Positions 20,645 through 59,706 of a DNA stretch of 64,000 bases are shown piece after piece. A model generated the notes under the pieces. It saw only the letters and a list, made by a program, of their open reading frames with translations. It had not been told where the DNA came from and searched no databases. The stretch lies in the IMG/VR virus record IMGVR_UViG_3300009177_000028, positions 140,388-204,387 of that record. One strand, given 5' to 3'. A program made the position numbers and the translations under genes. How positions within the stretch are numbered: position 1 is the first letter of the stretch; every line of letters begins with the position of its first letter.

Positions 20645-20915
20645 AAGCGCACTAGAAGAGCGCCTAGCGCGACCCTAGCCTATGACACCAAGATCATACC
20701 CCGGATGTAGTCAAAGGTCATGAGCTGTCGTTCAATGTTGCTCGAAAAAGGCTAATGGTTTCGTAGGGTAGACCTACATTATCCGCCAAAACTTTCGGAA
20801 TTCGTCATGGTAGTTTCTTTTCCTACATCGCAATTAGTTGCTGAATTCCGACCAACCAGGACACAAAGATCATTGTGGGATAAGATGCTACACCAATGAT
20901 ATCATATAGTTACAG

Positions 20916-20933
20916 TTGGCACCGACCCTGCAA
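20916..20933 (+). promoter_or_regulatory. sigma54-type promoter
   Basis: TTGGCACCGACCCTGCAA, GG-N10-GC, upstream of boxA and the long plus-strand gene run. Confidence 0.6.
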
Positions 20934-21032
20934 TGACCCCTAGACGCAACGGGAACGGATGAGAGCAGGGGTCACGCGGGCGGATCGCCCGCGCAGCCTG
21001 ACAGCGCACATGGTGCGCGCTGTCGCTCGATG

Positions 21033-21044
21033 TGGTCTTTGACA
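21033..21044 (+). promoter_or_regulatory. rrn-type boxA antitermination element
   Basis: TGGTCTTTGACA, 10/12 to E. coli boxA TGCTCTTTAACA. Confidence 0.5.
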
Positions 21045-21577
21045 ATCTAAACGTCTCACACGGGCGCCTCATGTGCGCCTACAGCGCGCGCCTAGCGCGT
21101 GTGCCTCCTACCTACGGTAAGGGACAGTGTGCGATAGCGGCGACCATATAGGTCCGCTCCTACCGCGTCCCACAATCACCGAGTAGCGCACACAACCGAA
21201 GCCACTGTGGGTTACATGCGGAAGATGTGTGGGCCAGGTGACCCGTCCTACATTCACTCCACACGGGAGACGATGTAGGCTACCCTCACCTAGTGTACGA
21301 ATCCCGAGGAGGGATAAACCGTAGGTAGGGCAATGTCCTGCTAGAGCCGACAATGTAGGCCGCGGTGAGGCGGTATGAGTCCGCAGCGTACGAATCAAGA
21401 GACTAAACGACTATGTGGGAGGGACGCCTAGAGTGTCCTTCCCCCGTAGCGTAAAGCCTACAAGGTAAGTAACTCTCTCCAAGTCTACGGTATTGGAGTA
21501 GGAGAGAACACCTTGTGAGCTTTACGCTGCGATCATCGCAGAGTGTCCCACAACAGCAGACAACAGGAGCCAACATC

Positions 21578-22150
21578 ATGAGCCAGACCACCAGCAACGA
21601 CAGCGCCGTCAAGTCGACCACCATCTCCTCCGATGTGGAGGAGCGTCTCACCGCCACCTTCAAGACCCTTCACCATCTCGTCTCCACCCACATGGTGAGT
21701 GCGGGTGCGAAGCTCACCTTCATGTCGGAGTTCGAGAAGTGTGGGATGGAGGACTACAAGGAGGTCGCGCATGCGGCACGGAAGCTGCTCGGCGCCAAGC
21801 GTCAGGAAAAGTGGGAGAACCGCATCAAGGGGATCCGTGCGGGGATCCAGGGTGTGGTCGACACCTACATGAACCGCAAACGTGCGGCCAAGGCGCAGTT
21901 CGACGCACTCCCGGAGGAGTTGCGCGCAGAAGGTGTGACCTTCAACCCCAACGTCTCCATCCCGGTGAAGGAGCTTGTGGGATGCTTCCCGCAGGGTGCG
22001 ACCCAGGAGCAGATCCTCCGAGACCTGAAGGATCTCTCCTACAACGTCATCCAGAATGCGGAAAAGGCGTACCTCATCCGCGTTGCCTTCGTTGCCGACA
22101 AGGTGGCAGACGAGGCGCCCAAGTCGGAGAAGACCGCCAAGGCGGCCTGA
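21578..22150 (+). CDS. hypothetical protein (first gene of the GC-rich run)
   Basis: AGGAG SD; strongly GC3-biased codons; ends KTAKAA. Confidence 0.85.
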   Translation: MSQTTSNDSAVKSTTISSDVEERLTATFKTLHHLVSTHMVSAGAKLTFMSEFEKCGMEDYKEVAHAARKLLGAKRQEKWENRIKGIRAGIQGVVDTYMNRKRAAKAQFDALPEELRAEGVTFNPNVSIPVKELVGCFPQGATQEQILRDLKDLSYNVIQNAEKAYLIRVAFVADKVADEAPKSEKTAKAA

Positions 22151-22173
22151 GCGCGCAGCGTTCCGCTGAGTCT

Positions 22174-22227
22174 CCTACATCCTGCTCCCAACTGCTCCCA
22201 TGTGGGGTGGTTGGGGGCAGTCGTAGG
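22174..22227 (+). ncRNA. intergenic hairpin family copy H1
   Basis: CCTAC-ATC-CTGCTCCCAAC...GTTGGGGGCAG-TC-GTAGG. Confidence 0.7.
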
Positions 22228-22252
22228 CGAGTCAACCACCAAGGAGGTTCAT

Positions 22253-22474
22253 GTGTTCCATACTCAGCCCAAGACCTACAAGAAGGTCTCTCTCCTCCAC
22301 AAGAACTACTTCGACCTACTCTGCGGCTCCAATGGCTACAGTAGGGAAGAGTACGACATCTGCGAGAAGGAAGACAATCTGGGGTTTCCTGTCTACACCG
22401 TGGACGTGTGGTCGCAAAGGTGCGACGACATGATGCAACGTGTGTTCAGCGAAGCCAACGGCTACAAGCGCTGA
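22253..22474 (+). CDS. hypothetical protein
   Basis: AAGGAGG SD then GTG 22253. Confidence 0.75.
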   Translation: MFHTQPKTYKKVSLLHKNYFDLLCGSNGYSREEYDICEKEDNLGFPVYTVDVWSQRCDDMMQRVFSEANGYKR

Positions 22475-22478
22475 TCTA

Positions 22479-22521
22479 CCTACACCATGCTCCCGAGGGT
22501 TACTTCGGGGGCATGAGTAGG
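22479..22521 (+). ncRNA. intergenic hairpin family copy H2
   Basis: CCTAC-ACC-ATGCTCCCGA...TCGGGGGCAT-GA-GTAGG (compensatory ATGC/GCAT). Confidence 0.72.
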
Positions 22522-22533
22522 AGGACCAGACAC

Positions 22534-22932
22534 ATGTACAAGTACGACGGACACTCCTTCAACATGTGCGAGGAGTGGTCGCAATGCCCACAACATCGAA
22601 CGGAGACCCACATGAAGGACAAGCTCGCTCAAGCGCCCGACCAGGTGCGACAGTTCGTACACGCTCTCATCTCCAACGCCAAAGAGGTGGAAGGGTGGGA
22701 AGTGTGCGACATGGAGGATGGCAAGTGCTTCGCTGACACCATAGCCCACATCGAGCACAAGGAAGACGGAAGGTGGGTGGTGTGCGACAACTACGAACGG
22801 TTCTTCTCTCTCATCTACACCTACACGGTGGCAGGCGAGTGGACCGTGCGCCGCATGTATGGCGAAGGTGGGGAGATGCCCTACAGCTTCGCCAAGTGTA
22901 TGGCGGATGCCTCCATCATGTTCACTGGCTGA
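22534..22932 (+). CDS. hypothetical protein
   Basis: AGGAGG SD; fills the space between H2 and H3. Confidence 0.75.
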   Translation: MYKYDGHSFNMCEEWSQCPQHRTETHMKDKLAQAPDQVRQFVHALISNAKEVEGWEVCDMEDGKCFADTIAHIEHKEDGRWVVCDNYERFFSLIYTYTVAGEWTVRRMYGEGGEMPYSFAKCMADASIMFTG

Positions 22933-22936
22933 TCCA

Positions 22937-22978
22937 CCTACGTCATGCCCTCATGTGTGTACATGGGGGCATTGGTAG
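22937..22978 (+). ncRNA. intergenic hairpin family copy H3
   Basis: CCTAC-GTC-ATGCCCTCATG...CATGGGGGCAT-TG-GTAG. Confidence 0.7.
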
Positions 22979-23019
22979 TGGGATTAGGCTCACTAACACC
23001 AAACAAGGGAGAATGTAAG

Positions 23020-23199
23020 ATGATCAAGTTCATTGTGGTTGTTCTGGCGTGCATCGGGGCATTCTTCGGTCTGGCGATTCTGTCGGGTCATGTCCCCCAG
23101 ATCTCCCACACCGCCTTCAACATCAGCACCTTTCAGGTCACGTGGTTGATGCTGGGCGTGTGTGCGACCGGGTTCGTCTCCTACAAGGTGTGCAAGTAA
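23020..23199 (+). CDS. small two-TM membrane protein, paralogue of 38068-38253
   Basis: MIKF...H.P...AF....WL..G.C...F..YK..K shared. Confidence 0.75.
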   Translation: MIKFIVVVLACIGAFFGLAILSGHVPQISHTAFNISTFQVTWLMLGVCATGFVSYKVCK

Positions 23200-23253
23200 A
23201 GGGTGCTGTAAGCGCCTAACGTACACATAACGTTACTCCAATCGAGGAAAACA

Positions 23254-23300
23254 GCGGCATATAGGCGCCTAGGTGGGTTCGACTCCCACATGCCGCCCTA
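23254..23300 (+). ncRNA. tRNA-like minihelix (acceptor stem plus T-arm)
   Basis: GCGGCAT/ATGCCGC 7-bp stem, TAGG-CG-CCTA mini-hairpin, GTGGG-TTCGACT-CCCAC T-arm. Confidence 0.5.
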
Positions 23301-23324
23301 AGTCATACATCAGCGGAGGATGTC

Positions 23325-23531
23325 ATGGTCAAGGTTACCAAGTGCCCCAATGTGGGTGATGCGGTCAAGATCGTCAAAGGCAAGAGGTCGGGTGATGTAG
23401 GCATCATCAAGCGATGTGCCTCGGTGTGGGGAGAGGACCGACTCAAGTGGTCGTCCTTCCTACTCGACATCAATGGTGAGGAAGTGTGGGTGCGTACGCA
23501 CCATGTGGAGAAACTGGAGAACGCGGCCTGA
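23325..23531 (+). CDS. KOW/SH3-like small protein
   Basis: VGDAVKIVKGKRSGDVGII KOW-like motif; ends ENAA. Confidence 0.6.
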   Translation: MVKVTKCPNVGDAVKIVKGKRSGDVGIIKRCASVWGEDRLKWSSFLLDINGEEVWVRTHHVEKLENAA

Positions 23532-23533
23532 CA

Positions 23534-23574
23534 CCCACACCCTGCTCCTAAGTAATCCTTGGGGGCAGAAGTGG
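23534..23574 (+). ncRNA. intergenic hairpin family copy H4
   Basis: CCCAC-ACC-CTGCTCC...GGGGGCAG-AA-GTGG (compensatory CCAC/GTGG). Confidence 0.7.
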
Positions 23575-23608
23575 TTGGCACGCTTGCATATAGCACAACG
23601 TATGCCAA
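23574..23608 (-). promoter_or_regulatory. repeated sigma54-type element, copy 4 (antisense)
   Basis: minus strand TTGG-CATACGTTGT-GC then TATATGCAAGCGTGCCAAC. Confidence 0.65.
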
Positions 23609-23620
23609 AGGAGGATTCCC

Positions 23621-24145
23621 ATGAAGATCAAGAGCCAGCGCACCACGACCTACACCGAGACCTACTCCCTCACCTTCGAGTACATCGGCTCCAATGGGAG
23701 CGGGTGTGCGTTCGACTGCGACAAGGAGGGAAAGGTCGACCTGACCAAGCTGCACCCGTGTGCGATTCTGACCTACACCGAAGCCAAGTTCGGACAGGTC
23801 ACCCGACGTGAGAACGTGCAGTACCGTGTGGGTGCAGATGGGGAATACGAGCCCATCCCCGGCACGGGTGAGATGGTCACCCGAGAGGTGAGCAAGGGTG
23901 AGGTCATCACCTACATCAACCGCCAGATCGTTCCTGCGGTGGGAGAGTGTGATTGTTGTGGGAGGGATGTCCACCTCTACGGTTTCACCAACACATGTGA
24001 GTGTGGGGCCGACTACAACATGTCGGGTCAGATGCTCGCTCCTCGTGAACAGTGGGGAGAGGAGACAGGTGAGACAGCCGCCGACATCCTCTCCTTCGAC
24101 TCCTACGATCGGGAGCCCATGGGCACCGATGAAGGATGGTTCTGA
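23621..24145 (+). CDS. hypothetical Cys-rich protein
   Basis: GGAGG SD; CDCC..C.C cluster. Confidence 0.8.
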   Translation: MKIKSQRTTTYTETYSLTFEYIGSNGSGCAFDCDKEGKVDLTKLHPCAILTYTEAKFGQVTRRENVQYRVGADGEYEPIPGTGEMVTREVSKGEVITYINRQIVPAVGECDCCGRDVHLYGFTNTCECGADYNMSGQMLAPREQWGEETGETAADILSFDSYDREPMGTDEGWF

Positions 24146-24161
24146 CAAAGTAGGAGTGCCG

Positions 24162-24203
24162 CCTACACCCTGCCTTCATGTGCAAGCATGAGGGTAGAAG
24201 TAG
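24162..24203 (+). ncRNA. intergenic hairpin family copy H5
   Basis: CCTAC-ACC-CTGCCTTCATG...CATGAGGGTAG-AA-GTAG (two G-U pairs on plus strand). Confidence 0.72.
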
Positions 24204-24237
24204 TTGGCATGCTTGCATGTAGCAGATTGTATGCCAA
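24203..24237 (-). promoter_or_regulatory. repeated sigma54-type element, copy 5 (antisense)
   Basis: minus strand TTGG-CATACAATCT-GC then TACATGCAAGCATGCCAAC. Confidence 0.65.
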
Positions 24238-24269
24238 TCGACCCCAAACACCCAAGGTAGGAGAGTGTC

Positions 24270-24830
24270 ATGAACTTCACGACCAAACCGGATACGTTCG
24301 TTCTCGTGGTGGCGGCCCTGTCGGATAAGCTGGTCCAGAAGGAGAACGAGTGTGTGGAGCTGCGAGACCACATCGCCTCCGACCATGCCAGCATGGACGA
24401 CATGCAGCGCACCATCACCGACCTGCGGGTCCAGTGTGAGCGACTGCAAGACAAGGCGGATGATGTGGACTACTTCCGCACTCGCTATCAGGACATGTCC
24501 CACAAGCTGGAGAACTACGAACACCTCCGCTCACAGAATGCCGAACTGTGGGAGCAGGTGCGAGTCCTGAAGATGGAGAACCACAAGCTCCGCTACGGTG
24601 GGCAGACTCCCGAGGAGACGGCCAACAACTACATGCTCTCCCAGGGGAGGCAGGTGTGGGAGCGTGGCAACAAGATTCAGTGCATCAAGGAGGTGCGAGA
24701 GGTGAGTGGATGGGGGCTGAAGGAAACCAAGGATTGGTGCGAAGCCTACATCGCCCGCCTGGATAACGAAAAGGAGGAGAGCGGCCCCGGTACCAAGCGC
24801 TCCTCCGGCAACGTAGCCAAAACTGGCTGA
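24270..24830 (+). CDS. coiled-coil protein with ribosomal bL12 (L7/L12) C-terminal-domain-like motif
   Basis: heptad-rich region then NKIQCIKEVREVSGWGLKETKDWCE. Confidence 0.65.
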   Translation: MNFTTKPDTFVLVVAALSDKLVQKENECVELRDHIASDHASMDDMQRTITDLRVQCERLQDKADDVDYFRTRYQDMSHKLENYEHLRSQNAELWEQVRVLKMENHKLRYGGQTPEETANNYMLSQGRQVWERGNKIQCIKEVREVSGWGLKETKDWCEAYIARLDNEKEESGPGTKRSSGNVAKTG

Positions 24831-24834
24831 CGCA

Positions 24835-24876
24835 CCTACACCCTGCCTCTATGTGTGAACATGGGGGCAGGAGTAG
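24835..24876 (+). ncRNA. intergenic hairpin family copy H6
   Basis: CCTAC-ACC-CTGCCTCTATG...CATGGGGGCAG-GA-GTAG. Confidence 0.72.
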
Positions 24877-24911
24877 CTGATTCAGACACAACACATGAAA
24901 GGAGAGAGGTC

Positions 24912-25037
24912 ATGAAGGTTCACAAGTCGCAGCGTGTGTTCCAAGAGGAGAAGAAGTATCCGGGTGTGGGTGCCCTCATCTGCGTCGGCTCTGGTCTCCT
25001 CTTTTGGGGGAGCTTGGCCTACCTCTTCGTTCACTGA
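24912..25037 (+). CDS. small membrane protein
   Basis: GAGG SD; C-terminal hydrophobic helix. Confidence 0.55.
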   Translation: MKVHKSQRVFQEEKKYPGVGALICVGSGLLFWGSLAYLFVH

Positions 25038-25057
25038 GGGAGTAGTGGGTCCAAGGG

Positions 25058-25092
25058 GTTGGCATGCTTGCATAGTGCAACATCCATGCCAC
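25058..25092 (-). promoter_or_regulatory. repeated sigma54-type element, copy 6 (antisense)
   Basis: minus strand GTGG-CATGGATGTT-GCA, canonical TTGCA -12 box. Confidence 0.7.
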
Positions 25093-25237
25093 AGCAGGCA
25101 TGTCGCCCCTACACCTACCTCAGAATACCTTCACCTATAATTCTTGTTGCACCTAACTTGAAACGTGCTAACTTATAATCTCGCCATTCTCGCAAGCCAA
25201 GGCCAAAACCTACATCGGCCCCATTAGGAGATAAGTC

Positions 25238-26131
25238 ATGAACGTGTATGAGATTGTCACCGAACGGATCATTGCAGCCCTGGAAAAGGGTGTCGTACCT
25301 TGGCGCATGCCCTGGCGTACCCAAGGTGGGAGCGGTCTCCCCAAGAACCTACAGAGTGGGAAGGAGTACCGAGGTGTCAACATCTTCCTACTGGGTGCGC
25401 AGGGGTACGCCTCTCCCTGGTGGGTTACCTACAAGCAGTGTACGGCCCGAGGTGGGCAGGTGCGCAAAGGTGAGAAGGGCACCCCGGTCATCTTCTGGAA
25501 GGTAGGAGATCATAAGACCAAGGTGGGCAAGAGTGGGAAACCGGAGAAGATGTTTATCCTCCGGTACTACACTGTCTTCAATGTCGCCCAGTGTGATGGG
25601 CTGGACTACCCCAAGGAGGCGGTGGTGGAAGCTCCCACCTTCGACCCCATCGAGCAATGCGAGAAGATCGTTCTCGCCTACAAGACCCTACCCAAGATTG
25701 AGCACGGAGGTGGGCGAGCCTGCTACTCCCCCTCCTTCGACAAGGTGATGATGCCGGAAAAGGAGAGCTTTGGTAAGAGGGAGGAATACTACTCCACACT
25801 CTTCCACGAGCTTACCCACAGCACCGGACATGAGAGCAGGTTGAACCGGGATGGGATCATGAATCCCATTCGGTTTGCCTCACATGACTACAGCTTTGAG
25901 GAGCTGGTAGCAGAATGTGGGGCGGCCTTTCTCTGCGCACATGCGGGTATCTTGGATACCACGCTGGACAACTCGGCCGCCTACATCTCCCACTGGGTGA
26001 GCAAGCTGAAGAGTGAGCCAAGGTGGATTGTGGAAGCCTCAAGTAAGGCAGCTAAGGCGGCTGACTACATCATGGGAGACCTGGTCAAAAAGGAGTCAGA
26101 GTCGGAGGAGTCAAGCGAGGAAGCCGCTTGA
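25238..26131 (+). CDS. ardC: ArdC-family ssDNA-binding antirestriction protein with zincin-like domain
   Basis: GVVPWRMPW, YRGVN, TYKQ..GGQVRKGEKG, YTVFNVAQ, TLFHELTHSTGH..RLNR, YSFEELVAE. Confidence 0.93.
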   Translation: MNVYEIVTERIIAALEKGVVPWRMPWRTQGGSGLPKNLQSGKEYRGVNIFLLGAQGYASPWWVTYKQCTARGGQVRKGEKGTPVIFWKVGDHKTKVGKSGKPEKMFILRYYTVFNVAQCDGLDYPKEAVVEAPTFDPIEQCEKIVLAYKTLPKIEHGGGRACYSPSFDKVMMPEKESFGKREEYYSTLFHELTHSTGHESRLNRDGIMNPIRFASHDYSFEELVAECGAAFLCAHAGILDTTLDNSAAYISHWVSKLKSEPRWIVEASSKAAKAADYIMGDLVKKESESEESSEEAA

Positions 26132-26218
26132 ACCGACATGTCAGGGACTGGGCTGGCCTACTCGGCTGGCTCAGTCTATTATCCTACATCCTCACACACA
26201 AGCCCTGAAAGGACGACC

Positions 26219-26638
26219 ATGAACGACAAGAGACCCTGGAATGAGGGAGGGGAGGAGAAGCCATATAGTGTCTCACTGTGGATACAGGATCCCTCCGACA
26301 TGAGTGACAATGACACATGTATGGCCGGGGAAGACTTCGCCACCGAAAAGGAAGCGCGAATGTGTCTGGCCGACATGAACGCACACTTCAATGACAGGTT
26401 CTACAAGGACGTACCTTATGTCCTGTTGGACGGCCCGAACGACCTACACGAGGTGACAGTGCGCACCCAAGCCCTCAAGCGGATGCAACGTGAGAGGGAG
26501 TGCGAGGACAGGGCGGCAAGGTCGGAGATGGCCATGCAAGCTGGGATGGGTATGGGCATTCATGCCTACAACGACATGATGGGATACGACTCTGAAGAGT
26601 ACGACCCTGACCTACACGGATACCTGCACGAAGACTGA
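26219..26638 (+). CDS. hypothetical protein
   Basis: AAAGGA SD; acidic. Confidence 0.75.
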   Translation: MNDKRPWNEGGEEKPYSVSLWIQDPSDMSDNDTCMAGEDFATEKEARMCLADMNAHFNDRFYKDVPYVLLDGPNDLHEVTVRTQALKRMQRERECEDRAARSEMAMQAGMGMGIHAYNDMMGYDSEEYDPDLHGYLHED

Positions 26639-26667
26639 GCAACCACAACAACCCGAAAGGTACGACC

Positions 26668-26886
26668 ATGAGCGACAACAACGGCAACAAGAGCGAAGGT
26701 AGCATCAAGACCGACAAGCGGAAGCAGTCTCTCTACTTTCCGGAGAGCATGCTCCAAGAGATCAAGGAGGAGGCGGCTCGGCTGGATCGTAGTCTGTCGT
26801 GGGTGGTTCAGCGTGCATGGAAGCTGGCACGCACCGAAGTCAAGAATCTGCCCAGCGTCTCCGACATCGAGACGGAGGACGAGTAA
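26668..26886 (+). CDS. MXAN_4361/MXAN_4362-family (TIGR04563-like) ribbon-helix-helix small protein
   Basis: DKRKQSLYFPESMLQEIKEEAARLDRSLSWVVQRAWKLAR matches the myxobacterial family as recalled. Confidence 0.88.
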   Translation: MSDNNGNKSEGSIKTDKRKQSLYFPESMLQEIKEEAARLDRSLSWVVQRAWKLARTEVKNLPSVSDIETEDE

Positions 26887-26894
26887 TCGTACCA

Positions 26895-26936
26895 CCTACA
26901 CCCTGCCCATTAGTGAGAGCTAGTGGGCAGGAGTAG
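26895..26936 (+). ncRNA. intergenic hairpin family copy H7
   Basis: CCTAC-ACC-CTGCCCATTAG...CTAGTGGGCAG-GA-GTAG. Confidence 0.72.
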
Positions 26937-26970
26937 TTGGCATGCTTGCATGTTGCACATCTCATGCCAC
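26936..26970 (-). promoter_or_regulatory. repeated sigma54-type element, copy 7 (antisense)
   Basis: minus strand GTGG-CATGAGATGT-GC then AACATGCAAGCATGCCAAC. Confidence 0.65.
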
Positions 26971-27004
26971 GGGGCGCCAGGCCCACACTCACCCACAATT
27001 CAGC

Positions 27005-27022
27005 GTGGCACATGACTTGCAT
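27005..27022 (+). promoter_or_regulatory. sigma54-type promoter (sense)
   Basis: GTGGCACATGACTTGCAT, canonical TGGCAC-N5-TTGC. Confidence 0.65.
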
Positions 27023-27079
27023 GTAATTGCATGGTCAATCAAAAGTGCTACAATTGATCAAAAGGAAAAGGAGGTTATC

Positions 27080-27313
27080 ATGTTTGGTATGAACAAGGCG
27101 CACATTGACACCGTCTATCAGCGAGAGGACGACATGTCCGACCTGATGCGCCGATGTCGGATGGCCCTCGACATGGGAGCCTCCAAGGAAGAAGTTCACG
27201 ACATCTGCATCCAAGCGGGTCAAAGTGAGGAACAAGCCTACTTGACCTACATCGCAGCCAAGCTGCTCACACGTGACGAAGCGTGCGAGACTGGCGCCCG
27301 AAAGGTGGCCTGA
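27080..27313 (+). CDS. hypothetical protein
   Basis: AAGGAGG SD, ATG 27080. Confidence 0.75.
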   Translation: MFGMNKAHIDTVYQREDDMSDLMRRCRMALDMGASKEEVHDICIQAGQSEEQAYLTYIAAKLLTRDEACETGARKVA

Positions 27314-27314
27314 C

Positions 27315-27791
27315 ATGTACTCCAAAGAGATCAAAGGTAGTTGGTTCGGCGTGACCATTCCCGAATGGTTGCGAGCCTTCGACTGTCGGTCCAGCGAGGA
27401 CGATATCGCACCTCGTACTCCCTGGGGCTCCTATCTCTGGTCAAGTGAGAGAGCTGCCGTGGACCTGGGCCTGCGTGCGGAAGGTGTCTACAACGACACT
27501 ACGCCCGTGGGCTGCTCCACCTACATCGATGCTCGTACGGCTCCTGAGTCGGAGTTGAAACGACAGGTGGAGAATATGGTGGCAGAGGCGACCAGACTTC
27601 GGGAGGAGTACCTAGAAGGGAAGAAGTTTCCCGATACTGAGGGACAAGGTGGGAGTTGTCTCTACATGCCGGTGGCTGTCTGCCTGAGTAACTTCGGGTG
27701 GTCGGTCCTGGCAGATCGGACCCAAGGAATCGTTCGCCGGTTTGGCTACAATGCCACACCCAAACGTACCAAGAAAGGAAGTGTGCGATGA
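27315..27791 (+). CDS. hypothetical protein
   Basis: abuts previous stop; ATGA overlap to next. Confidence 0.75.
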   Translation: MYSKEIKGSWFGVTIPEWLRAFDCRSSEDDIAPRTPWGSYLWSSERAAVDLGLRAEGVYNDTTPVGCSTYIDARTAPESELKRQVENMVAEATRLREEYLEGKKFPDTEGQGGSCLYMPVAVCLSNFGWSVLADRTQGIVRRFGYNATPKRTKKGSVR

Positions 27792-28390
27792 GCAAGTACA
27801 AGGGTGACGGGGCGTTGGAGCAGATCAACCCCGAGCGACTTACCTTGGGGTGTGTGGTGCGCATGCCCTACGGAAGTGGGGAAGTGCCTGCCTTTGGTGA
27901 CAGTGTCATCATCGGTATCCACGTCTCCTACTCTTCCAAGCGAACGAGTAAGGAGCGGTGCGATAAGCGCCACTACGAGACTCTCGCACAAGCTCTTACC
28001 CAAGCGCAGGATGGCGACTTCGTGGTGGTGAGTCTGGCTCGCCCCTACGTGTACGCCAACAACCCCTTCGTCTCTACACCGGGCTGGCTGGTCGGGTGCG
28101 AGAAGTACGAGGTGATGGGAGACCGCATCATCGACACCCACAAGGTGGTGGTTCAGAGCACGGGTGAGTATGCCACCTACAACATCAAACCTGCGCTCCA
28201 TTCGTGGGAGGTGGTGGTTGGCAACATCGGGAGCGTCTATCGCGACTTGTCGGAGAGCGCGGCCCGAGCCACCTACAAGGTGTACGTAGAGAACAGCAAG
28301 TGGCAGGGTGGACGTGCCAGTGGGGAAAGCGTCACTCTCTTCTGCGATGGTGAGATTGTGGAGGAGCATGTGGGGACGGTGGAAGGATGA
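27788..28390 (+). CDS. hypothetical protein
   Basis: coupled ORF, coding-like GC3. Confidence 0.75.
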   Translation: MSKYKGDGALEQINPERLTLGCVVRMPYGSGEVPAFGDSVIIGIHVSYSSKRTSKERCDKRHYETLAQALTQAQDGDFVVVSLARPYVYANNPFVSTPGWLVGCEKYEVMGDRIIDTHKVVVQSTGEYATYNIKPALHSWEVVVGNIGSVYRDLSESAARATYKVYVENSKWQGGRASGESVTLFCDGEIVEEHVGTVEG

Positions 28391-28629
28391 TTACATACCT
28401 CGACCCCAAACAAGTCATTGCCAAGCGCCAGACCACTCCTCCCCACAACCGGAGTCGCAGTGGGTATGGCAACAAGCTGCCTACATCCTGGGAGCTTCAA
28501 CTACAGGACAAGCGGTGGAGGCGGGTGTACGTGATTCAGTGGAGCAACGCTGGATCCGCCTACATCCTGGTCAAAGGTGAGAAGTTGTTCCTGGGTTCCT
28601 ACGAACCCTCCTATGAAGGGAAGGTGTGA
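28387..28629 (+). CDS. conserved phage-type hypothetical protein
   Basis: GYGNKLPT...RRVY..WSNAGSAY motif recalled from phage hypotheticals. Confidence 0.7.
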   Translation: MITYLDPKQVIAKRQTTPPHNRSRSGYGNKLPTSWELQLQDKRWRRVYVIQWSNAGSAYILVKGEKLFLGSYEPSYEGKV

Positions 28630-28630
28630 G

Positions 28631-29011
28631 ATGGGCTGGGATAAAGCATGCGGAGATGAGCAGTGTGAGGGATGTGACGCCACCCTGGAGGAAGGGGAGG
28701 ACATGTATGTCCAAGGGGACAGCGTGTACTGCGAAGGGTGCAACGAGGACCGCTTGGATGACGAAGCGGGTGAATGGGATGAATTGGACTACATGGACCG
28801 TGAAGGTGACTATCCCATCGATGGGGTAGGATTCGCGGACCCTGGTGGTCACTCGGCCCTACGTGCAGCTACACCCAACAACCCAAGGGACTGCGATTGT
28901 CCTACCTGTGGGGCGGAGGACGTTCTGACCCGCATCGACCGTCAACGTGGGTATCAGTGCGACAGGTGCGCTGATCGGGCGGAAGGTCGGAGCGGGTACG
29001 GAGACTACTGA
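28631..29011 (+). CDS. Zn-finger acidic protein
   Basis: several CxxC pairs (CEGC, CPTC, CDRC). Confidence 0.75.
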   Translation: MGWDKACGDEQCEGCDATLEEGEDMYVQGDSVYCEGCNEDRLDDEAGEWDELDYMDREGDYPIDGVGFADPGGHSALRAATPNNPRDCDCPTCGAEDVLTRIDRQRGYQCDRCADRAEGRSGYGDY

Positions 29012-29012
29012 C

Positions 29013-29330
29013 ATGAAGACACTGGTGCTGGTGGAGGATGATCTGATGCTTGCTAGCACCTTCATTCGGGTGTTGGGCAAAACTCACAACATCCTCCACT
29101 TCCTGACAGTCAAGGATGCCAGAGCACATCTGGCCTTGAATCCCACACCTGATGTCCTCCTCCTGGATCGTCAGGTGGGGTATGACAATGGGTGGGCGTT
29201 GCGGGAGGAGGTGGGTACGGGTGTCAGGGTGGTCCTGATGACGGGCGCTCCTCCCCAAGGCAATTCACTTACCTTCTTCCACAAGGGAGTAGATAACATA
29301 CAAAAACTTATCAGTATGGTAGAAGGCTAA
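29013..29330 (+). CDS. stand-alone receiver domain protein
   Basis: LVLVEDD, VLLLD, VLMTG, FHKG. Confidence 0.8.
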   Translation: MKTLVLVEDDLMLASTFIRVLGKTHNILHFLTVKDARAHLALNPTPDVLLLDRQVGYDNGWALREEVGTGVRVVLMTGAPPQGNSLTFFHKGVDNIQKLISMVEG

Positions 29331-29334
29331 ACTT

Positions 29335-29377
29335 CCTACACCCTGCCTATTAGAATTATCTAGTGGGCAGAAGTAGG
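29335..29377 (+). ncRNA. intergenic hairpin family copy H8
   Basis: CCTAC-ACC-CTGCCTATTAG...CTAGTGGGCAG-AA-GTAGG. Confidence 0.72.
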
Positions 29378-29421
29378 GGGATTCATCCTGAATCTTCTGA
29401 GACAAGGAAAGAGGAGAGCGC

Positions 29422-29976
29422 ATGAATAAGTTGGTGTATGCGGTAGTGGTTGCCTTGGCAGCGGTGGTGGGATGTGCAGCTCCGGTGGGAGACAAGTCGG
29501 AGCAGGTGGGACAGGTCAGTCAGGCGCTGGTTACCTTCGACCCTGCGACAGGGACGGGGTTTGTGGGGAAAGGTGATATCCAGCTTCCCTTCGGGTGGAA
29601 CAATGCCACCTTGCAGGCCAATGCAAGTTCGCTCACCTTCACCTACCAGAGCAGCGCCACCTACGAGGCGGTGTGCGAGTGGACCACCGGTGAAGGGACT
29701 CGTGGTCAACGGACCCACGATGTCACACACACCAAGACCAGTGTGGTCAACGACACCATCTCCTACGATGCTCGCACCCACAAGCAGGTGGACGGATTCT
29801 TCCTGACAGGGTACGGCAGTGTGACCGAAGGTGGGGAACCTGTTCCCGAGGTAGGAGGACCCTGCCCTGGCAACCCTGGAACGGATGGGGTGTGGGTCAG
29901 TGTGGTCCTGCTCAACTCCACGGGTGGGGGCTTGTGGGTGACCAACGCAGCGGGTGGGACGGCTCAGCTTCTGTAG
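29422..29976 (+). CDS. lipoprotein of unknown function
   Basis: lipobox LAAVVGC; FDPATGTGFVGKGDIQLPFGWNN motif recalled from bacterial secreted hypotheticals. Confidence 0.8.
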   Translation: MNKLVYAVVVALAAVVGCAAPVGDKSEQVGQVSQALVTFDPATGTGFVGKGDIQLPFGWNNATLQANASSLTFTYQSSATYEAVCEWTTGEGTRGQRTHDVTHTKTSVVNDTISYDARTHKQVDGFFLTGYGSVTEGGEPVPEVGGPCPGNPGTDGVWVSVVLLNSTGGGLWVTNAAGGTAQLL

Positions 29977-29984
29977 AGATACTT

Positions 29985-30058
29985 TCTACATCCTGCCGAT
30001 TATTCGTCTGGCTGATAAACTCGGTTTATTCGTCTGGCAGATAGTCGGCAGTAGTAGG
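29985..30058 (+). ncRNA. intergenic hairpin family copy H9 (extended)
   Basis: TCTAC-ATC-CTGCCGATTAT...ATAGTCGGCAG-TA-GTAGG; loop holds TATTCGTCTGGC twice (30001, 30027). Confidence 0.68.
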
Positions 30059-30304
30059 AGGTGTGTCATGTAATCGGCTAACTAACTTGTTTACCCGATA
30101 GTGTGGGAAACCCTGAGAGTGTGTCGCGACATTCAAGACATGGTGTATTGAATGGGCGCATGTGAGAATCCACGATACCCCAAGAGCTTTTGACGACAAT
30201 GTAGTTCTAAGTCTTCTATTACTCGCCTATAACCGAAACCTGCCGAAAGGGTGGGGAGTAGGTTATGGGCGCACATAGAGGGATTAGAAAGGAAAGGCAA
30301 GACC

Positions 30305-30769
30305 ATGCACGACATCAACGGCAAACCACTTCACATCGGCTCGGACATCTACTCTTCCCTACATGGACTCTGCAAGATCGTCGGTGTGCGAGAGGAGCAC
30401 AATCCCGACCAGGGAGGAGCTTGCATCGAGGTAAACTCCTACACTCGGGGTGGAGGTATCATCCTTCGCACTCACGAGCACAAGGTGACCAAGGTGCGTA
30501 CTTGGAAGGAGATGGCGGATGAATCCCTACGGGTGCAGGATGCCTGCAACCTGTCGGGAGTGGTCCACGCTTTCTCTACCATCATCACCGAGGTGCGCAC
30601 ACGGTTGGACAGTGAGGGCCAGGGTGGGACGGACAACGTCAACAACCATCCTGTCTGTCGTCTCTTCTCCGACAAGATTGCTTCCCTGACGGGTACGCAA
30701 TTCTGCAACGATGACGCACACCAAAACTTCTCCGATGCCTACAAGTGGGCACACGAGCAGAGCAAGTGA
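30305..30769 (+). CDS. hypothetical protein
   Basis: SD-like GGAAAGG; GTGA overlap to next. Confidence 0.75.
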   Translation: MHDINGKPLHIGSDIYSSLHGLCKIVGVREEHNPDQGGACIEVNSYTRGGGIILRTHEHKVTKVRTWKEMADESLRVQDACNLSGVVHAFSTIITEVRTRLDSEGQGGTDNVNNHPVCRLFSDKIASLTGTQFCNDDAHQNFSDAYKWAHEQSK

Positions 30770-30981
30770 GCAAGAAGCCTACTTACTCCCTGGTGAAGGG
30801 AGATGTCTTCATCGGGTCTGACTTGCAAGCCTGGACGGTGGACGAAGTGGTCAAACCGGAGGGCTGGAACACACTTCCGCAGATTGGGGAAAAGCCCAAG
30901 GTGTGGGAGGTGAGAGCACATCGGGGCCAAGCCAATCGGCGCTTCTACTACCACGGCACACGTTTGGTGGAAGTCAAGTAG
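30766..30981 (+). CDS. hypothetical protein
   Basis: GTGA overlap. Confidence 0.65.
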   Translation: MSKKPTYSLVKGDVFIGSDLQAWTVDEVVKPEGWNTLPQIGEKPKVWEVRAHRGQANRRFYYHGTRLVEVK

Positions 30982-31127
30982 TTACGCGCACTTAGGTGAG
31001 ACATTATCGGTATGGCGATAAGAATATCGCTATAGCGATAAAAAGTCTGTAACCACTTGGAACTACAGGGGAATGCGCGAACTAGGGCGCGAGAGTCGGA
31101 GGTGTAGGGCGGGCTGGGCCTGGGGTG

Positions 31128-31162
31128 GTTGGCATGTTTGCATGTAGCAAAAAGGGTGCCAC
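31128..31162 (-). promoter_or_regulatory. repeated sigma54-type element, copy 8 (antisense)
   Basis: minus strand GTGGCACCCTTTTTGCT, canonical TGGCAC-N5-TTGC. Confidence 0.7.
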
Positions 31163-31375
31163 CTGCCGCTGGAGCTTCTGGGAGGCGCACCCGCACCTAC
31201 CTTCTGCTTCAATTCTTTTGCAATTGAGCGTTTCTTAGTGGCGCATGTGAAAGCGCGCTCCCATAATGAATGGCCAGCGCAAACAAACGAATGAGAGGGG
31301 TGGGACAATGAAGCTGGGAATCTGACAACGGCAATTCAACCTGCAACCTCAACCTACAGAGAAGGATAATCAACC

Positions 31376-31705
31376 ATGGCAATGCGAGCAATCAACGAAG
31401 TTCACGACAGCGCAATCATCCGACAGTTGGTCACGATGGACGAGATGGACCTCTTCATGTCCACCTTCGACCAGACTGTCACGGTAGGTGAGCATCCACT
31501 AACCTTCTCGGGATGGGCAATCAAGAATGAAGTGCAGGTGATGCAGTGTGCGTCCGAGTGCGACATCGCCTTGGGGCTGCTGGCGCTGTCTCCCATCTTT
31601 CAGCACAAGGACTACGCGGATGACGCCTTGTACGAGGTGGGATGTCTGATGCACGGTAGCGAAGAAGAATACATCAACTTCTTGATGTTGATCAGCAATC
31701 GCTGA
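31376..31705 (+). CDS. hypothetical protein
   Basis: GAAGGA SD. Confidence 0.75.
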   Translation: MAMRAINEVHDSAIIRQLVTMDEMDLFMSTFDQTVTVGEHPLTFSGWAIKNEVQVMQCASECDIALGLLALSPIFQHKDYADDALYEVGCLMHGSEEEYINFLMLISNR

Positions 31706-31709
31706 TTGT

Positions 31710-31754
31710 CCTACACCCTGCCCATAACTGGAAACGGTTGTGGGCATGAGTAGG
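31710..31754 (+). ncRNA. intergenic hairpin family copy H10
   Basis: CCTAC-ACC-CTGCCCATAAC...GTTGTGGGCAT-GA-GTAGG. Confidence 0.7.
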
Positions 31755-52231: not shown

Positions 52232-52411
52232 TGGGATTCTTCGATTGGATTGCGAGTCTGTTCGAGCCTCCCCCGAGGTACAAACCACCTGGACGAGTCT
52301 GCCGGCAATGCGGCCGATCCTACCCACATTCGGATCAAGCTCGAATCTGTGAGGATTGGGACAAGGTGTTGGGGAAGGGGAGGCACGAGGCGGGGTGACC
52401 CGCCCGGTGTA

Positions 52412-52446
52412 GGTGGCATGCTTGCAATTAGCAATTTATAGACCGT
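52412..52446 (-). promoter_or_regulatory. repeated sigma54-type element, copy 9 (antisense)
   Basis: minus strand CGG-TCTATAAATT-GC then TAATTGCAAGCATGCCAC; -24 box degenerate, spacing kept. Confidence 0.55.
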
Positions 52447-54750: not shown

Positions 54751-54795
54751 CTGGCATACATCTTGCTAGTGGGTAAGATTGGCATAAACTTTGCA
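54751..54795 (+). promoter_or_regulatory. two tandem sigma54-type promoters
   Basis: CTGGCATACATCTTGCT (54751) and TTGGCATAAACTTTGCA (54779), both GG-N10-GC with TTGC. Confidence 0.7.
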
Positions 54796-57315: not shown

Positions 57316-58071
57316 ATGATGAAATCGGTTCTGTCATTCGGCTTGGTCTCGATTCCAGTAGAGATTCAGAATACAGTGGCCCCTAATGGAGGCATGTGCT
57401 GGCTATCTCCACAAGGTAATCGAGTATCAGTAGAGTACGTTGACAGTGTGACCGGAGAACGTCTGGTGCGCAATCAGCTCCTTCATGGAGTAGAGGTAAT
57501 CAAGGAAAAGTATGTTACCTTCACCAATGCAGAGCTAAAGGCATTGTTGGATGATAGGGGTAATACCATCCTGATTCAACAGGTAATACCAATTCGAGCA
57601 CTTTCCCTTCATGGTGTGGAAAAGTCATACTACCTGACCCCACATAAGATCCATAAACCATACCGTCTACTACATAGTTGCCTAAAGTCTTCCAACAGGG
57701 CTGCTGTAGGTAAATGGCATACGAGGGGCAAAGACCACCTTGTCTTACTTTACCCTACACCTAGCTCATTGGTCATGCTTCAGCTACACTATCAGACCGA
57801 GTTACGGGAGGTGTGCTTCAGCTTTGCCAAGGGATCCGAGCCCAATCGGCAAGAGGTCGCATTAGCGAACGAATTGCTTGACAGGCTTGCCTCAGACGGG
57901 TTAGATGTGGCGTCCTATCAGGACGAGTATGCCCAGCGCTTGCGTGCCGCAGTTGAGGCAAAACAAGCAGGGAACCCGGATCTCGCGACATTACTACGTA
58001 AGTCGCTGAAAGGCAAACATGAAGGTAGAGCTAAGGGACGCCAAAGTCGAGCTGGAGGTAGGAGAAGGTAA
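57316..58071 (+). CDS. ku: Ku (NHEJ/Gam-like) DNA end-binding protein
   Basis: LSFGLVSIPV, VDSVTGE, YVTFT..EL, EKSYYL.P, YRLL..L....AVG, LH(Y)..ELR, E..LA..L, YQDEY..RL...V.AK. Confidence 0.88.
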   Translation: MMKSVLSFGLVSIPVEIQNTVAPNGGMCWLSPQGNRVSVEYVDSVTGERLVRNQLLHGVEVIKEKYVTFTNAELKALLDDRGNTILIQQVIPIRALSLHGVEKSYYLTPHKIHKPYRLLHSCLKSSNRAAVGKWHTRGKDHLVLLYPTPSSLVMLQLHYQTELREVCFSFAKGSEPNRQEVALANELLDRLASDGLDVASYQDEYAQRLRAAVEAKQAGNPDLATLLRKSLKGKHEGRAKGRQSRAGGRRR

Positions 58072-58378: not shown

Positions 58379-58388
58379 GAGCAAAAAC

Positions 58389-58465
58389 CAAACGGCCCCT
58401 ACTTCGTAGGCCGATCTCACTCAGTGTGGTGAGGTTGGACCTTCGACTAGGGGCCGTTTTTATTT
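58389..58465 (+). terminator. long hairpin/terminator
   Basis: AAACGGCCCCTA...TAGGGGCCGTTTTTATTT. Confidence 0.75.
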
Positions 58466-58789
58466 GTCCTACGTATCCTACATTTCCCTACATAGTTACC
58501 CACTGTAGTCGTCAAGCAAATACCATGCCATGACGCGGTAACGCAGCCAGCTACGCAAAGAGTGCAAAGTTGCCACAATCTTGCGTACCGAGCAAAAGTG
58601 CCACAACCGTAGGCTTTACGGCTTAGCTACGATGTAGGTGTCGCAACTTTTTGCAGACTGCCACAACGGCCGAGGTCGGGCGGTAGATCGCAGTGCCCTG
58701 GTAGCTCGTGGTCTAATTGACTTGGTTTTCCGGGCAATTACGAGCTTCAATTGTACCCTGCTGGTCTCAGTGTGAATGACCTGCGAAAG

Positions 58790-58806
58790 CTGGCATGGCA
58801 TTAGCA
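58790..58806 (+). promoter_or_regulatory. sigma54-type promoter
   Basis: CTGGCATGGCATTAGCA, GG-N10-GC, about 60 nt upstream of boxA. Confidence 0.55.
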
Positions 58807-58864
58807 ATAGCTCTCATCACGTGGCAACCAGCCACAAAGCAAAAGCAGAATAGCAATTCTGCCA

Positions 58865-58883
58865 TGCTCTTTGAAAACTGAAT
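58865..58883 (+). promoter_or_regulatory. rrn-type boxA antitermination element
   Basis: TGCTCTTTGAAAACTGAAT; 10/12 to E. coli boxA and like the TCTTTGAAAACTGAA form of many rrn leaders. Confidence 0.7.
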
Positions 58884-59199
58884 CCTGACAGTCGGTTAGT
58901 TTCATACTTACCGAGTAGGTTCGAATCGTGGATCCAAAGTGCCACGGTTCGCGGGCTACGTAGCTCGGGCGCGACCTAAGTACCCTTCTGAAACAAGCAG
59001 AGTAGGAGGGCGAAAACACTAGAGAGTCGGCTGACTTGGCTTGCCAAGCGGCCCTCCCTACCGGCGCACTATCTCGAAAGATGAGCATGCACTAATACTT
59101 CTAGTCAGAGTAAAAAGCAAGTTTAGTACCGTATTAGATTACTTATCAACTACGGTACACTAAGTAGTAATTCAGTTTTCACAATGAGAGGAGTCAATC

Positions 59200-59706
59200 A
59201 TGAACGAGACCAAGCAGCAAGCGGTTGCAGTCAAGGTGGAGGATCGATTCAAGGCGCCTCGGCCGGCTTATACGGCGCCCGACAACGGGGGCGTCACAAT
59301 GCCTCAGCCGAAGGACAATCGCCCGGCCCTGAGCCTCAGGGAGCAAGCAAAGCAGAGTGGTGACGACAAGTTGGCGGCGCTCTTCGCTAAGGCAGAAGAG
59401 AATGCTCGCAAGTCGCTGGACCGAGCACAAGGTAAGGTGGTGGAGTCGAAACCCCGAGTTACCAAAAGCCGAAAGCAAAAGGAGCAAACGACCCCCATTA
59501 TTCCTGCTCAATTCAAGCCGGAAGATGTGTGTGATGATGTCACCTTCCTGAAGCGAACCATCAGCGGTGACTACCATTCCCCCGAGATGAAAGCGCTCTT
59601 CTGGGCCAACGGTGGGGAAAAGTTTCTGAAGGCCGGTCTCAGCTACGCTTCGGCTTTCTCCAATCTCCGTAGGGAAAAGCAGAACGCTATCTCCGCAAAG
59701 AAGTAA
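59200..59706 (+). CDS. hypothetical protein
   Basis: GAGGAG SD; charged. Confidence 0.75.
   Translation: MNETKQQAVAVKVEDRFKAPRPAYTAPDNGGVTMPQPKDNRPALSLREQAKQSGDDKLAALFAKAEENARKSLDRAQGKVVESKPRVTKSRKQKEQTTPIIPAQFKPEDVCDDVTFLKRTISGDYHSPEMKALFWANGGEKFLKAGLSYASAFSNLRREKQNAISAKK

What the first reader, a model, noticed from the sequence alone, without database searches (positions are those of the whole stretch)
58389..59190. Second regulatory island: isolated half-sites, sigma54 promoter, boxA and a ~300-nt structured leader
Seen: 800 nt without a credible ORF; TGCCACAA at 58571, 58599 and 58659, the first two in GCA-N4-TGCCA context, and another GCA-N4-TGCCA at 58853-58864. This is the invariant arm of the nine-copy element occurring alone, upstream and downstream of the 58790 promoter. 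After boxA come stacked stems (GAATCGTGG/CCACGGTTC; GTAGGAGGG/CCCTCCCTAC). Inference: the half-site is an independent protein-binding motif (enhancer or operator), and this island mirrors 20.2-21.6 kb.
Basis: partly seen in the sequence, partly recalled or inferred. Interest (0 to 1): 0.6.

Follow-up and report, generated by a model that had tools for sequence, protein, structure and literature searches.

The report
Phage sigma-54 promoter with structured boxA leader
This gene-free 800-base stretch of a large soil phage is a conserved control region: a sigma-54-type promoter drives a roughly 380-base folded leader RNA that carries an rRNA-style boxA antitermination signal ahead of the next block of genes. 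The leader matches no catalogued RNA family.

Summary
The window is the last 64 kb of a 204-kb IMG/VR phage record. The island sits in its GC-rich, one-directional part, which consists mostly of genes without database matches.

Relatives of the downstream 168-aa gene (37-59% protein identity) all keep an ORF-free island of about 800-1000 nt. They conserve:
- a sigma-54-spaced promoter, TGGCA[TC]G-N5-NGCA, at 58791-58806;
- a covarying hairpin followed by a boxA-like GCTCTTTGAAAAC at 58866-58878;
- in eight of the nine distinct relatives whose contig reaches that far, a multi-helix leader. It is 80-83% identical in DNA where the protein is only 52-59% identical.

Covariation supports the fold (0 of 500 shuffles reach it).

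Two of the three TGCCACAA sites hold their position (about -220 and -192) in close relatives. The third does not. The "half-site" at 58853 is simply one arm of an RNA hairpin.

The 20.2-21.6 kb island has the same layout but no detectable homology.

Best reading: an enhancer-dependent sigma-54 promoter followed by a Nus/boxA processive-antitermination leader that contains a new structured RNA domain. No Rfam family matches. Transcription, the host and the activator were not tested.

The parts
58390..58465 (+). Intrinsic terminator of the upstream Ku-containing operon. It is a long hairpin (58390-58459) overlapping a T-run, and a U-rich tract on the other side makes it look bidirectional.
   Evidence: Local fold gives -45.8 kcal/mol. 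The T-run is conserved in relatives.
58466..58495 (+). Conserved block with three CCTAC repeats spaced 9-10 nt apart, immediately after the terminator.
   Evidence: 88-89% identical to L024/L025/L026; alignment.
58515..58530 (-). Sigma-54-spaced motif TGGCATGGTATTTGCT on the minus strand. Relatives carry a forward-oriented equivalent at this place.
   Evidence: relatives.
58564..58578 (+). Site 1, GCAAAGTTGCCACAA. It lies at -219 from the -24 element and is conserved in position in close relatives.
58592..58606 (+). Site 2, GCAAAAGTGCCACAA, 28 nt after site 1. It is conserved in position in close relatives.
58630..58656 (+). The most widely conserved upstream block, containing a T-tract (…GTGTCGCAACTTTTTGCAG). 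It is a candidate bend, IHF-like or activator site about 140 nt before the -24 element.
   Evidence: Alignment; visible in L035, L038 and L029. The function is inferred.
58651..58666 (+). Site 3, TTGCAGACTGCCACAA. It is not conserved in relatives.
58791..58806 (+). Sigma-54-type promoter TGGCATG-N5-AGCA with GG and GC 12 nt apart. The inferred start is near 58817.
   Evidence: TGGCA[TC]G-N5-NGCA stands at the orthologous place in eight distinct relatives, with a variable spacer; L028 has TGGCACA there.
58817..59199 (+). Inferred leader RNA of about 383 nt.
   Evidence: Fold z = -5.6. The covariance model hits relatives at E 1e-11 to 1e-93. Covariation. G-U pairs outnumber A-C pairs 49 to 13 on the plus strand.
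58845..58862 (+). Hairpin P1, boxB-like, 3 nt before boxA.
   Evidence: Four of 5 pairs show changes on both sides; per-sequence folds.
58866..58878 (+). boxA-like GCTCTTTGAAAAC.
   Evidence: Conserved as GGTCTTTGAAAAC, GCTCTCTGACAAT, GTTCATTGACAAT and GCTCTATGACAAT in relatives. Unstructured in local folds. Matches 10 of 11 positions of GYTCTTTAANA (PMC5725501).
58892..58914 (+). Helix P2.
   Evidence: 5 pairs with changes on both sides.
58923..58950 (+).
   Evidence: A 9-13 bp stem forms at this place in all 8 distinct sequences, each with a different sequence.
58952..58967 (+). Helix P4.
   Evidence: 100% of cells paired and 3 pairs with changes on both sides.
58971..59067 (+). Junction domain. 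It has a closing helix, P5 (58983-58990 with 59003-59010) and P6/P7 (59020-59060), joined by nearly invariant single-stranded segments.
   Evidence: This is the best-conserved DNA in the island.
59126..59158 (+). Optional hairpin GTACCGTA…TACGGTAC. It is present in the window, L035 and L038 and absent in L024, L025 and L034.
59188..59202 (+). Shine-Dalgarno GAGGAG and the ATG (59200) of the 168-aa gene (59200-59706).

Best explanation
The island is the control region for the next rightward transcription unit, which starts at the 168-aa gene at 59200.

Proposed sequence of events:
1. The upstream operon ends at a strong hairpin terminator.
2. A conserved upstream region follows: a CCTAC block, two position-conserved GCCACAA sites and a T-tract block. 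I infer that it binds an activator or bending protein.
3. Host sigma-54 RNA polymerase starts near 58817 from the -24/-12 promoter at 58791-58806.
4. The nascent leader first forms hairpin P1 and then exposes a single-stranded boxA. This is the boxB-boxA order of rRNA operons.
5. I infer that NusB/NusE and partner proteins load there and make the polymerase resistant to termination across the long downstream unit.
6. The following conserved multi-helix domain of about 200 nt (58890-59070) belongs to the same leader. Its role is unknown. It may be an extra protein or polymerase binding platform, a processing site, or a regulatory switch.

Shown here: conservation of the promoter motif, of boxA and of the RNA fold. 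Inferred: sigma-54 use, the start site, Nus loading, and the role of the upstream sites.
For: - An ORF-free island of about 800-1000 nt is retained upstream of homologues with 37-59% identity.
- TGGCA[TC]G-N5-NGCA stands at the same place with a variable spacer in eight distinct relatives; L028 has TGGCACA there.
- The same motif type, TGGCA-N7-TGC[AT], occurs 12 times in the 44-kb GC-rich part against about 0.9 simulated. Plus-strand copies precede gene starts. A tandem pair ahead of the primase-like gene is conserved in L024.
- boxA follows the promoter by 51-108 nt in the window and 8 of the 9 relatives scanned.
- It is preceded by a covarying hairpin and is unstructured in local folds.
- Leader DNA is 80-83% identical where the protein is 52-59% identical.
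- On the leader alignment, 80% of cells pair, 20 pairs change on both sides, and 0 of 500 shuffles reach the score. Slid controls score far lower.
- G-U pairs favour the plus strand.
- Only the two long-leader islands carry boxA-like motifs.
Against: - No RNA data: no RNA run could be listed, so the start site and transcription itself are untested.
- The host is unknown.
- No sigma-54 DNA-binding domain or activator AAA+ domain is encoded in the held 48% of the phage.
- The window's -12 element is AGCA rather than TGCA.
- boxA differs from the gammaproteobacterial consensus at one position.
- The upstream sites lie further from the promoter (-130 to -290) than many known enhancers, and only two are conserved.
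- The large conserved domain is not needed by any known boxA system, so antitermination may not be its purpose.
- The covariation alignment was fitted by a model built on the same structure, which biases the pair counts.
Confidence: 0.55

Rival explanations
1. The folded domain is a cis-regulatory sensor that controls expression of the 168-aa gene. It could be a riboswitch, a protein-binding autoregulatory leader or a thermosensor. In this reading boxA is incidental or secondary.
For: The domain has nearly invariant single-stranded joining segments between covarying helices, which is typical of ligand- or protein-binding RNAs. An anti-SD-like CCCTCC and an SD-like AGGAGG lie inside the domain.
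Against: The alternative helix shows no covariation and cannot form in L035/L038. No Rfam riboswitch matches even at E<=10. boxA is conserved more widely than the domain itself: it is present in L041 and L028, where the model finds no domain. No terminator or sequestered SD is conserved.
Confidence: 0.2
2. The TGGCA-N7-TGC motifs are not host sigma-54 promoters. They would be recognition sites for a phage-specific factor, such as its own polymerase or sigma, or a repressor or operator protein. The nine-copy element and the half-sites would then be variants of the same operator.
For: The nine-copy element pairs a properly spaced half with a half 3 nt shorter, and it occurs in both orientations relative to the genes. 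In 23-31 kb the properly spaced half points against the genes. No activator or sigma-54 gene is found in the held part. The window carries the upstream motif inverted relative to relatives.
Against: At promoters ahead of genes, conservation is exactly the sigma-54 pattern: GG and GC fixed 12 nt apart with a free spacer. About half the phage is missing, and a host activator could serve.
Confidence: 0.15
3. The island is a DNA-level element in which the GCCACAA repeats act as iterons: a replication origin, a partition site or a packaging site.
For: There are three direct repeats within 96 nt. The island lies next to Ku and a primase/polymerase-like gene.
Against: Only two repeats are conserved. 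There is no conserved AT-rich unwinding region; 58700-58790 is the least conserved part. The best-conserved part covaries as a single strand with G-U pairs, which a duplex DNA site would not show.
Confidence: 0.05

Closest known systems
rRNA-operon antitermination leader (boxB-boxA-boxC; NusB/NusE/NusA/NusG/SuhB complex)
   Same: A hairpin is followed within a few nucleotides by a single-stranded boxA close to the consensus, early in a long leader at the head of a long transcription unit. The element order matches that given in PMC10250234, and the consensus comes from PMC5725501.
   Different: It is phage-borne and ahead of protein genes. It is driven by a sigma-54-type promoter rather than a sigma-70 promoter. 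It is followed by a conserved folded domain of about 200 nt with no rRNA counterpart. No boxC was recognised.
Lambda nut sites (boxA + boxB with N protein) and HK022 put RNA
   Same: These are phage leader RNA elements that make host polymerase resistant to terminators across long early operons.
   Different: The order is hairpin then boxA, whereas in nut it is boxA then boxB. No N-like protein was identified. The folded domain is far larger than put. No Rfam family matched at E<=10.
Sigma-54 promoters with upstream enhancer and bending site (for example the glnAp2 and pspA types)
   Same: The -24 GG and -12 GC elements are at the canonical spacing. Conserved repeated sites and a T-tract block lie 130-250 nt upstream.
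   Different: No activator was identified. Sigma-54 use by phages is rare; Pseudomonas phage YuA is a reported case (bioRxiv 10.1101/2023.10.13.562163). Here at least 12 such motifs populate one 44-kb phage region.

Membership tests
Sigma-54-dependent promoter | TGGCAC-N5-TTGCW-like sequence with GG and GC 12 nt apart | tested here: met
   58791-58806 is TGGCATGGCATTAGCA. The -12 element is AGCA in the window and TGCA, CGCA or AGCA in relatives.
Sigma-54-dependent promoter | -24 and -12 elements conserved at fixed spacing with a free spacer in orthologous positions | tested here: met
   Eight distinct relatives show this; L028 has TGGCACA at the same place. The same is seen for the tandem pair at 54752/54780 against L024.
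Sigma-54-dependent promoter | Upstream enhancer bound by an AAA+ activator | tested here: inconclusive
   Conserved upstream blocks exist. No PF00158 domain is found in the held 48% of the phage. The host is unknown.
Sigma-54-dependent promoter | Transcription start about 12 nt after the GC, dependent on rpoN | not testable with these tools
   No RNA run could be listed.
boxA / Nus-factor antitermination site | Match to the boxA consensus (GYTCTTTAANA in gammaproteobacteria) | tested here: met
   GCTCTTTGAAA matches 10 of 11 positions. Variants are conserved in eight relatives.
boxA / Nus-factor antitermination site | Single-stranded, early in the transcript, with an adjacent hairpin (boxB) | tested here: met
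   boxA begins about 50 nt after the inferred start. Local folds give 0 to -4 kcal/mol. Hairpin P1 ends 3 nt upstream and covaries.
boxA / Nus-factor antitermination site | Binding by NusB/NusE and read-through of downstream terminators | not testable with these tools
   This needs biochemistry or reporters.
Any Rfam family (riboswitches, put, EAR, 6S, ribozymes and others) | Covariance-model match | tested here: not met
   No hit at gathering thresholds in the whole window. Only two chance-level hits at E<=10 in 58380-59260, both on the terminator.
Same RNA family as the 20.9-21.6 kb leader | Detectable sequence or structure homology | tested here: not met
   Model R1 finds one copy in the window and one in the 204-kb record. 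BLAST finds only short shared words.

The most novel reading that the evidence does not exclude
A group of large soil phages runs a whole early, host-takeover genome region on host sigma-54. They head their long transcription units with a previously undescribed class of structured leader RNA of about 300 nt. This leader would combine an rRNA-type boxB-boxA module with a new folded domain that reprograms the polymerase or senses a signal. The TGGCA-N4-TGC half-sites and the nine-copy palindromes would serve as binding sites for a dedicated, still unidentified activator.
Probability: 0.3. Interest if true: 0.75.

Novelty: new variant of a known kind. Interest (0 to 1): 0.6.

Why it matters
Phage takeover of host transcription is known mainly through sigma-70 promoters, phage polymerases and lambda-type antitermination.

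Here a conserved sigma-54-type promoter is coupled to an rRNA-style boxA leader, and at least a dozen similar promoters populate the same region. If the reading is right, the phage lineage depends on the enhancer-gated sigma factor and on the host Nus machinery.

The leader is also a well-supported candidate for a new structured RNA family. It is more conserved than the neighbouring proteins, it covaries, and it has no Rfam match.

All the predictions can be tested directly with standard promoter, Nus-binding and read-through assays.

Tried and rejected
- **Public phage and viral collections.** Near-identity search of public phage genomes found nothing. IMG/VR scans with the 168-aa protein, Ku, a profile of the homologues and two DNA patterns also found nothing.
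- **Nine-copy motif in species genomes.** The scan returned only scattered single chance hits.
- **Rfam.** No hit at gathering thresholds and nothing meaningful at permissive thresholds.
- **Antisense 95-aa ORF as a gene.** Rejected. Amino-acid identity is below DNA identity, and no homologue exists in distant relatives.
- **CCTAC(A) enrichment as a signal.** Inside genes it is mostly xCC-TAC-Axx codons.
- **Homology between the two islands.** Rejected.
- **Refined covariance model with extra helices.** Helix P3 was therefore judged from per-sequence folds. re-used eight short sub-sequences printed.
- **Host inference by boxA pattern.** A search of five genomes was uninformative. The MAGs that hold L024 and L029 are not in the genome set.
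- **First gene of the first island.** It has no relatives beyond its own cluster, so that island could not be compared.
- **Function of the 168-aa protein.** Pfam, PHROGs and the Atlas gave nothing.
- **RNA evidence.** No run could be listed.

Full report
**Context**

The window is the last 64 kb of a 204,387-bp IMG/VR virus record that CheckV rates as 48% complete. The first ~160 kb has 38-43% GC and encodes very large proteins that mostly lack Pfam matches, which looks like a jumbo-phage structural region. From window position ~20.1 kb to the end, GC jumps to 0.49-0.56.

That GC-rich part carries almost only plus-strand small genes, and most have no family. The exceptions are ArdC (25238-26131), Ku (57316-58071) and a primase/polymerase-like 538-aa protein. 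The island at 58389-59190 lies between the Ku operon and a 168-aa gene of unknown function (59200-59706).

**Checking the observation**

- TGCCACAA occurs three times in the window, all inside 96 nt. Its total count is ordinary, but the clustering is not.
- GCA-N4-TGCCA is enriched in the window, 16 found against 2.4 expected. Most copies belong to the nine-copy quasi-palindrome TTGGCAYGCTTGCAT-NN-WGCA-N6-RTGCCA.
- The island has no credible ORF. The 95-aa antisense frame is open in close relatives, but its amino-acid identity (51-67%) is below the DNA identity (80-83%). It has no counterpart in more distant relatives.

**Relatives**

The 168-aa protein has 15 homologues (37-59% identity) in soil and other metagenomes. 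Fetching their contigs gave nine distinct island sequences (L024, L025, L027, L028, L029, L034, L035, L038, L041), together with near-identical copies of several of these. A DNA pattern search added L033, which holds only the island.

Wherever the contig reaches far enough, there is a gene-free gap of about 800-1000 nt upstream. The stretch 58844-59125 is 80-83% identical to L024, L025, L026 and L034, although the adjacent protein is only 52-59% identical. Selection on the DNA or RNA itself therefore exceeds selection on the neighbouring gene.

**Promoter**

TGGCA[TC]G-N5-NGCA stands at the same place in the window and eight distinct relatives; L028 has TGGCACA there. GG and GC are 12 nt apart and the spacer sequence is free. 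This is the conservation pattern expected of a sigma-54 -24/-12 promoter.

The motif type is a feature of the whole GC-rich region.
- TGGCA-N7-TGC[AT] occurs 12 times in 44 kb (simulated mean 0.9, maximum 4). The rate is 0.27 per kb against 0.05 per kb in the left 160 kb.
- Plus-strand copies sit ahead of gene starts. One at 27006 precedes an SD and ATG at 27081.
- A tandem pair at 54752/54780 lies ahead of the primase-like gene, and L024 conserves it with different spacers.

The canonical geometry puts the start near 58817, giving a leader of about 383 nt. This is inference, because no RNA run could be listed. No sigma-54 DNA-binding domain or AAA+ activator domain is encoded in the held half of the genome.

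**Leader**

Three nucleotides after a covarying hairpin (P1, 58845-58862) lies GCTCTTTGAAAAC. Relatives have GGTCTTTGAAAAC, GCTCTCTGACAAT, GTTCATTGACAAT or GCTCTATGACAAT, always 51-108 nt after the promoter. The segment is unstructured in every local fold.

It matches 10 of 11 positions of the gammaproteobacterial boxA consensus GYTCTTTAANA (PMC5725501). The hairpin-then-boxA order is that of rRNA operon leaders (PMC10250234).

A covariance model built from six sequences finds the leader in all closer relatives (E 1e-51 to 1e-93) and in L029/L030 (E about 1e-11). It finds only one copy in the phage record.

On the resulting alignment:
- 80% of cells pair, against 71% in shuffles;
- 20 pairs change on both sides;
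- the covariation score is 0.28 against 0.15, and 0 of 500 shuffles reach it;
- slid controls score 0.04-0.14.

Helices P1, P2, P4, the closing helix and P6/P7 carry the signal. P3 was out of register in that alignment. In per-sequence folds it is a 9-13 bp stem in all eight distinct sequences, each with a different sequence.

G-U pairs (49) outnumber A-C pairs (13), which favours the plus strand as the folded strand. Both measures lean towards the model that fitted the alignment. No Rfam family matches.

GAATCGTGG/CCACGGTTC is P3 and is well supported. GTAGGAGGG/CCCTCCCTAC can form in the window and in close relatives (78% of cells), but it has no compensatory change and does not exceed shuffles. 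Its 3' arm instead pairs with 59020-59026 in a helix that covaries. It might be an alternative conformer, but nothing here shows that.

**Upstream half**

Four blocks are conserved:
- the terminator T-run;
- a CCTAC-repeat block (58466-58495);
- a block holding sites 1 and 2 (58554-58606);
- a T-tract block (58630-58656).

Sites 1 and 2 keep their distance from the promoter (about -220 and -192) and their 28-nt spacing in L024, L025 and L034. The conserved core there is GCYACAA. Site 3 is not conserved. The T-tract block is recognisable even in L035, L038 and L029.

Relatives also carry a forward sigma-54-type motif directly after the terminator. It is a perfect match in L035, L038 and L029. 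The window has one on the opposite strand at that position (58530 to 58515).

The GCA-N4-TGCCA at 58853 is the 3' arm of P1 and varies in sequence among relatives, so it is not a DNA half-site. Overall, an upstream protein-binding region is plausible, but the specific half-site idea is only partly borne out.

**Comparison with the first island**

The stretch 20.2-21.6 kb holds:
- three nine-copy elements;
- a sigma-54-type motif at 20917;
- a hairpin followed by GGTCTTTGACAAT at about 21033;
- a long leader that folds with z = -6.0.

The layout matches the second island. Neither BLAST nor the covariance model detects homology between the two. The first gene downstream of that island has no relatives, so its island could not be compared. 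Only these two long-leader islands carry boxA-like motifs. Short-leader promoters at 27006 and 54780 do not.

**Interpretation**

The best-supported reading is an enhancer-dependent sigma-54 promoter that drives a leader whose early part is an rRNA-type boxB-boxA module, which would set up processive antitermination for a long unit. A new conserved folded domain of unknown role follows.

My confidence in each step:

| Step | Confidence |
|---|---|
| A conserved plus-strand structured RNA is present | about 0.9 |
| The promoter is of sigma-54 type | about 0.7 |
| boxA acts through Nus factors | about 0.5 |
| The upstream sites bind an activator | about 0.35 |

Rival readings are:
- a sensor or autoregulatory leader;
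- a phage-specific factor reading the TGGCA motifs;
- a DNA-level origin or partition site.

**Caveats**

- The host is unknown and half the phage genome is missing.
- The abrupt GC change could reflect mosaicism. An independent contig (L023) confirms the island region itself.
- All functional steps are inferred from sequence.

Noticed in passing
window 20232-20497, 23571-23608, 24200-24237, 25055-25092, 26933-26970, 31125-31162, 52409-52440: The nine-copy quasi-palindrome pairs a sigma-54-spaced half (TGGCAT-N6-TGC) with a half 3 nt shorter. The three copies at 20.2-20.5 kb point the properly spaced half rightward. The copies at 23-31 kb point it against the genes and sit 14-60 nt before start codons. 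At 26.9 kb one lies 37 nt upstream of a perfect plus-strand sigma-54-type motif (27006). Its function is unresolved.
   Followed up: partly
window 54752-54795; L024 1563-1610: Two tandem sigma-54-type motifs lie 28 nt apart ahead of the primase/polymerase-like gene, whose true ATG is near 54857. L024 conserves them with different spacer sequences.
   Followed up: partly
window 13889-15470 (minus strand): The phage encodes a histidine kinase (PAS, HisKA, HATPase) and a stand-alone receiver-domain protein. A sigma-54-type motif lies at 15470 to 15455. The kinase gene sits next to the primase-like gene in relative L024.
   Followed up: partly
window 58385-58530 (minus strand): The inverted sigma-54-type motif at 58530 to 58515 could start a leftward transcript of about 120 nt. 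It would carry three GUAGG motifs and end at the hairpin at 58390-58459, which has U-rich tracts on both sides. This is a possible small RNA. GAGUAGG also recurs twice in the leader and three times in the first island.
   Followed up: no
window 22479-31735: A family of intergenic hairpins of the form CCTACACCCTGCC…GGGCAGGAGTAG follows stop codons and has no T-run. They often sit directly before a nine-copy element. They may be terminators or processing sites that a boxA-modified polymerase would need to pass.
   Followed up: no
window ~19.9-20.2 kb: GC changes abruptly from about 0.40-0.44 to 0.54. An intermediate patch of about 0.50 at 14-16 kb holds the kinase. This looks like a mosaic genome, or less likely an assembly join.
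   Followed up: partly
window 20773-31710: CCTACA occurs about 4 times per kb on the plus strand. Inside genes it is mostly xCC-TAC-Axx (18 of 24 in that frame), so it reflects codon usage rather than a signal.
   Followed up: yes
window 6629-7726: The phage encodes a class-I release-factor-like protein with PCRF and RF-1 domains.
   Followed up: no
window 9017-17778: There is a long tandem run of plus-strand ORFs of about 110-140 aa, often with overlapping stop and start codons. This may be a paralogous array. It was not examined.
   Followed up: no
window 17775-19852 (minus strand): Three peptidase-like genes lie just left of the GC jump: metallopeptidase-like, trypsin-like and C39-like.
   Followed up: no
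L041 244-706: A distant relative has four tandem plus-strand sigma-54-type motifs within 450 nt upstream of its boxA-like leader.
   Followed up: no
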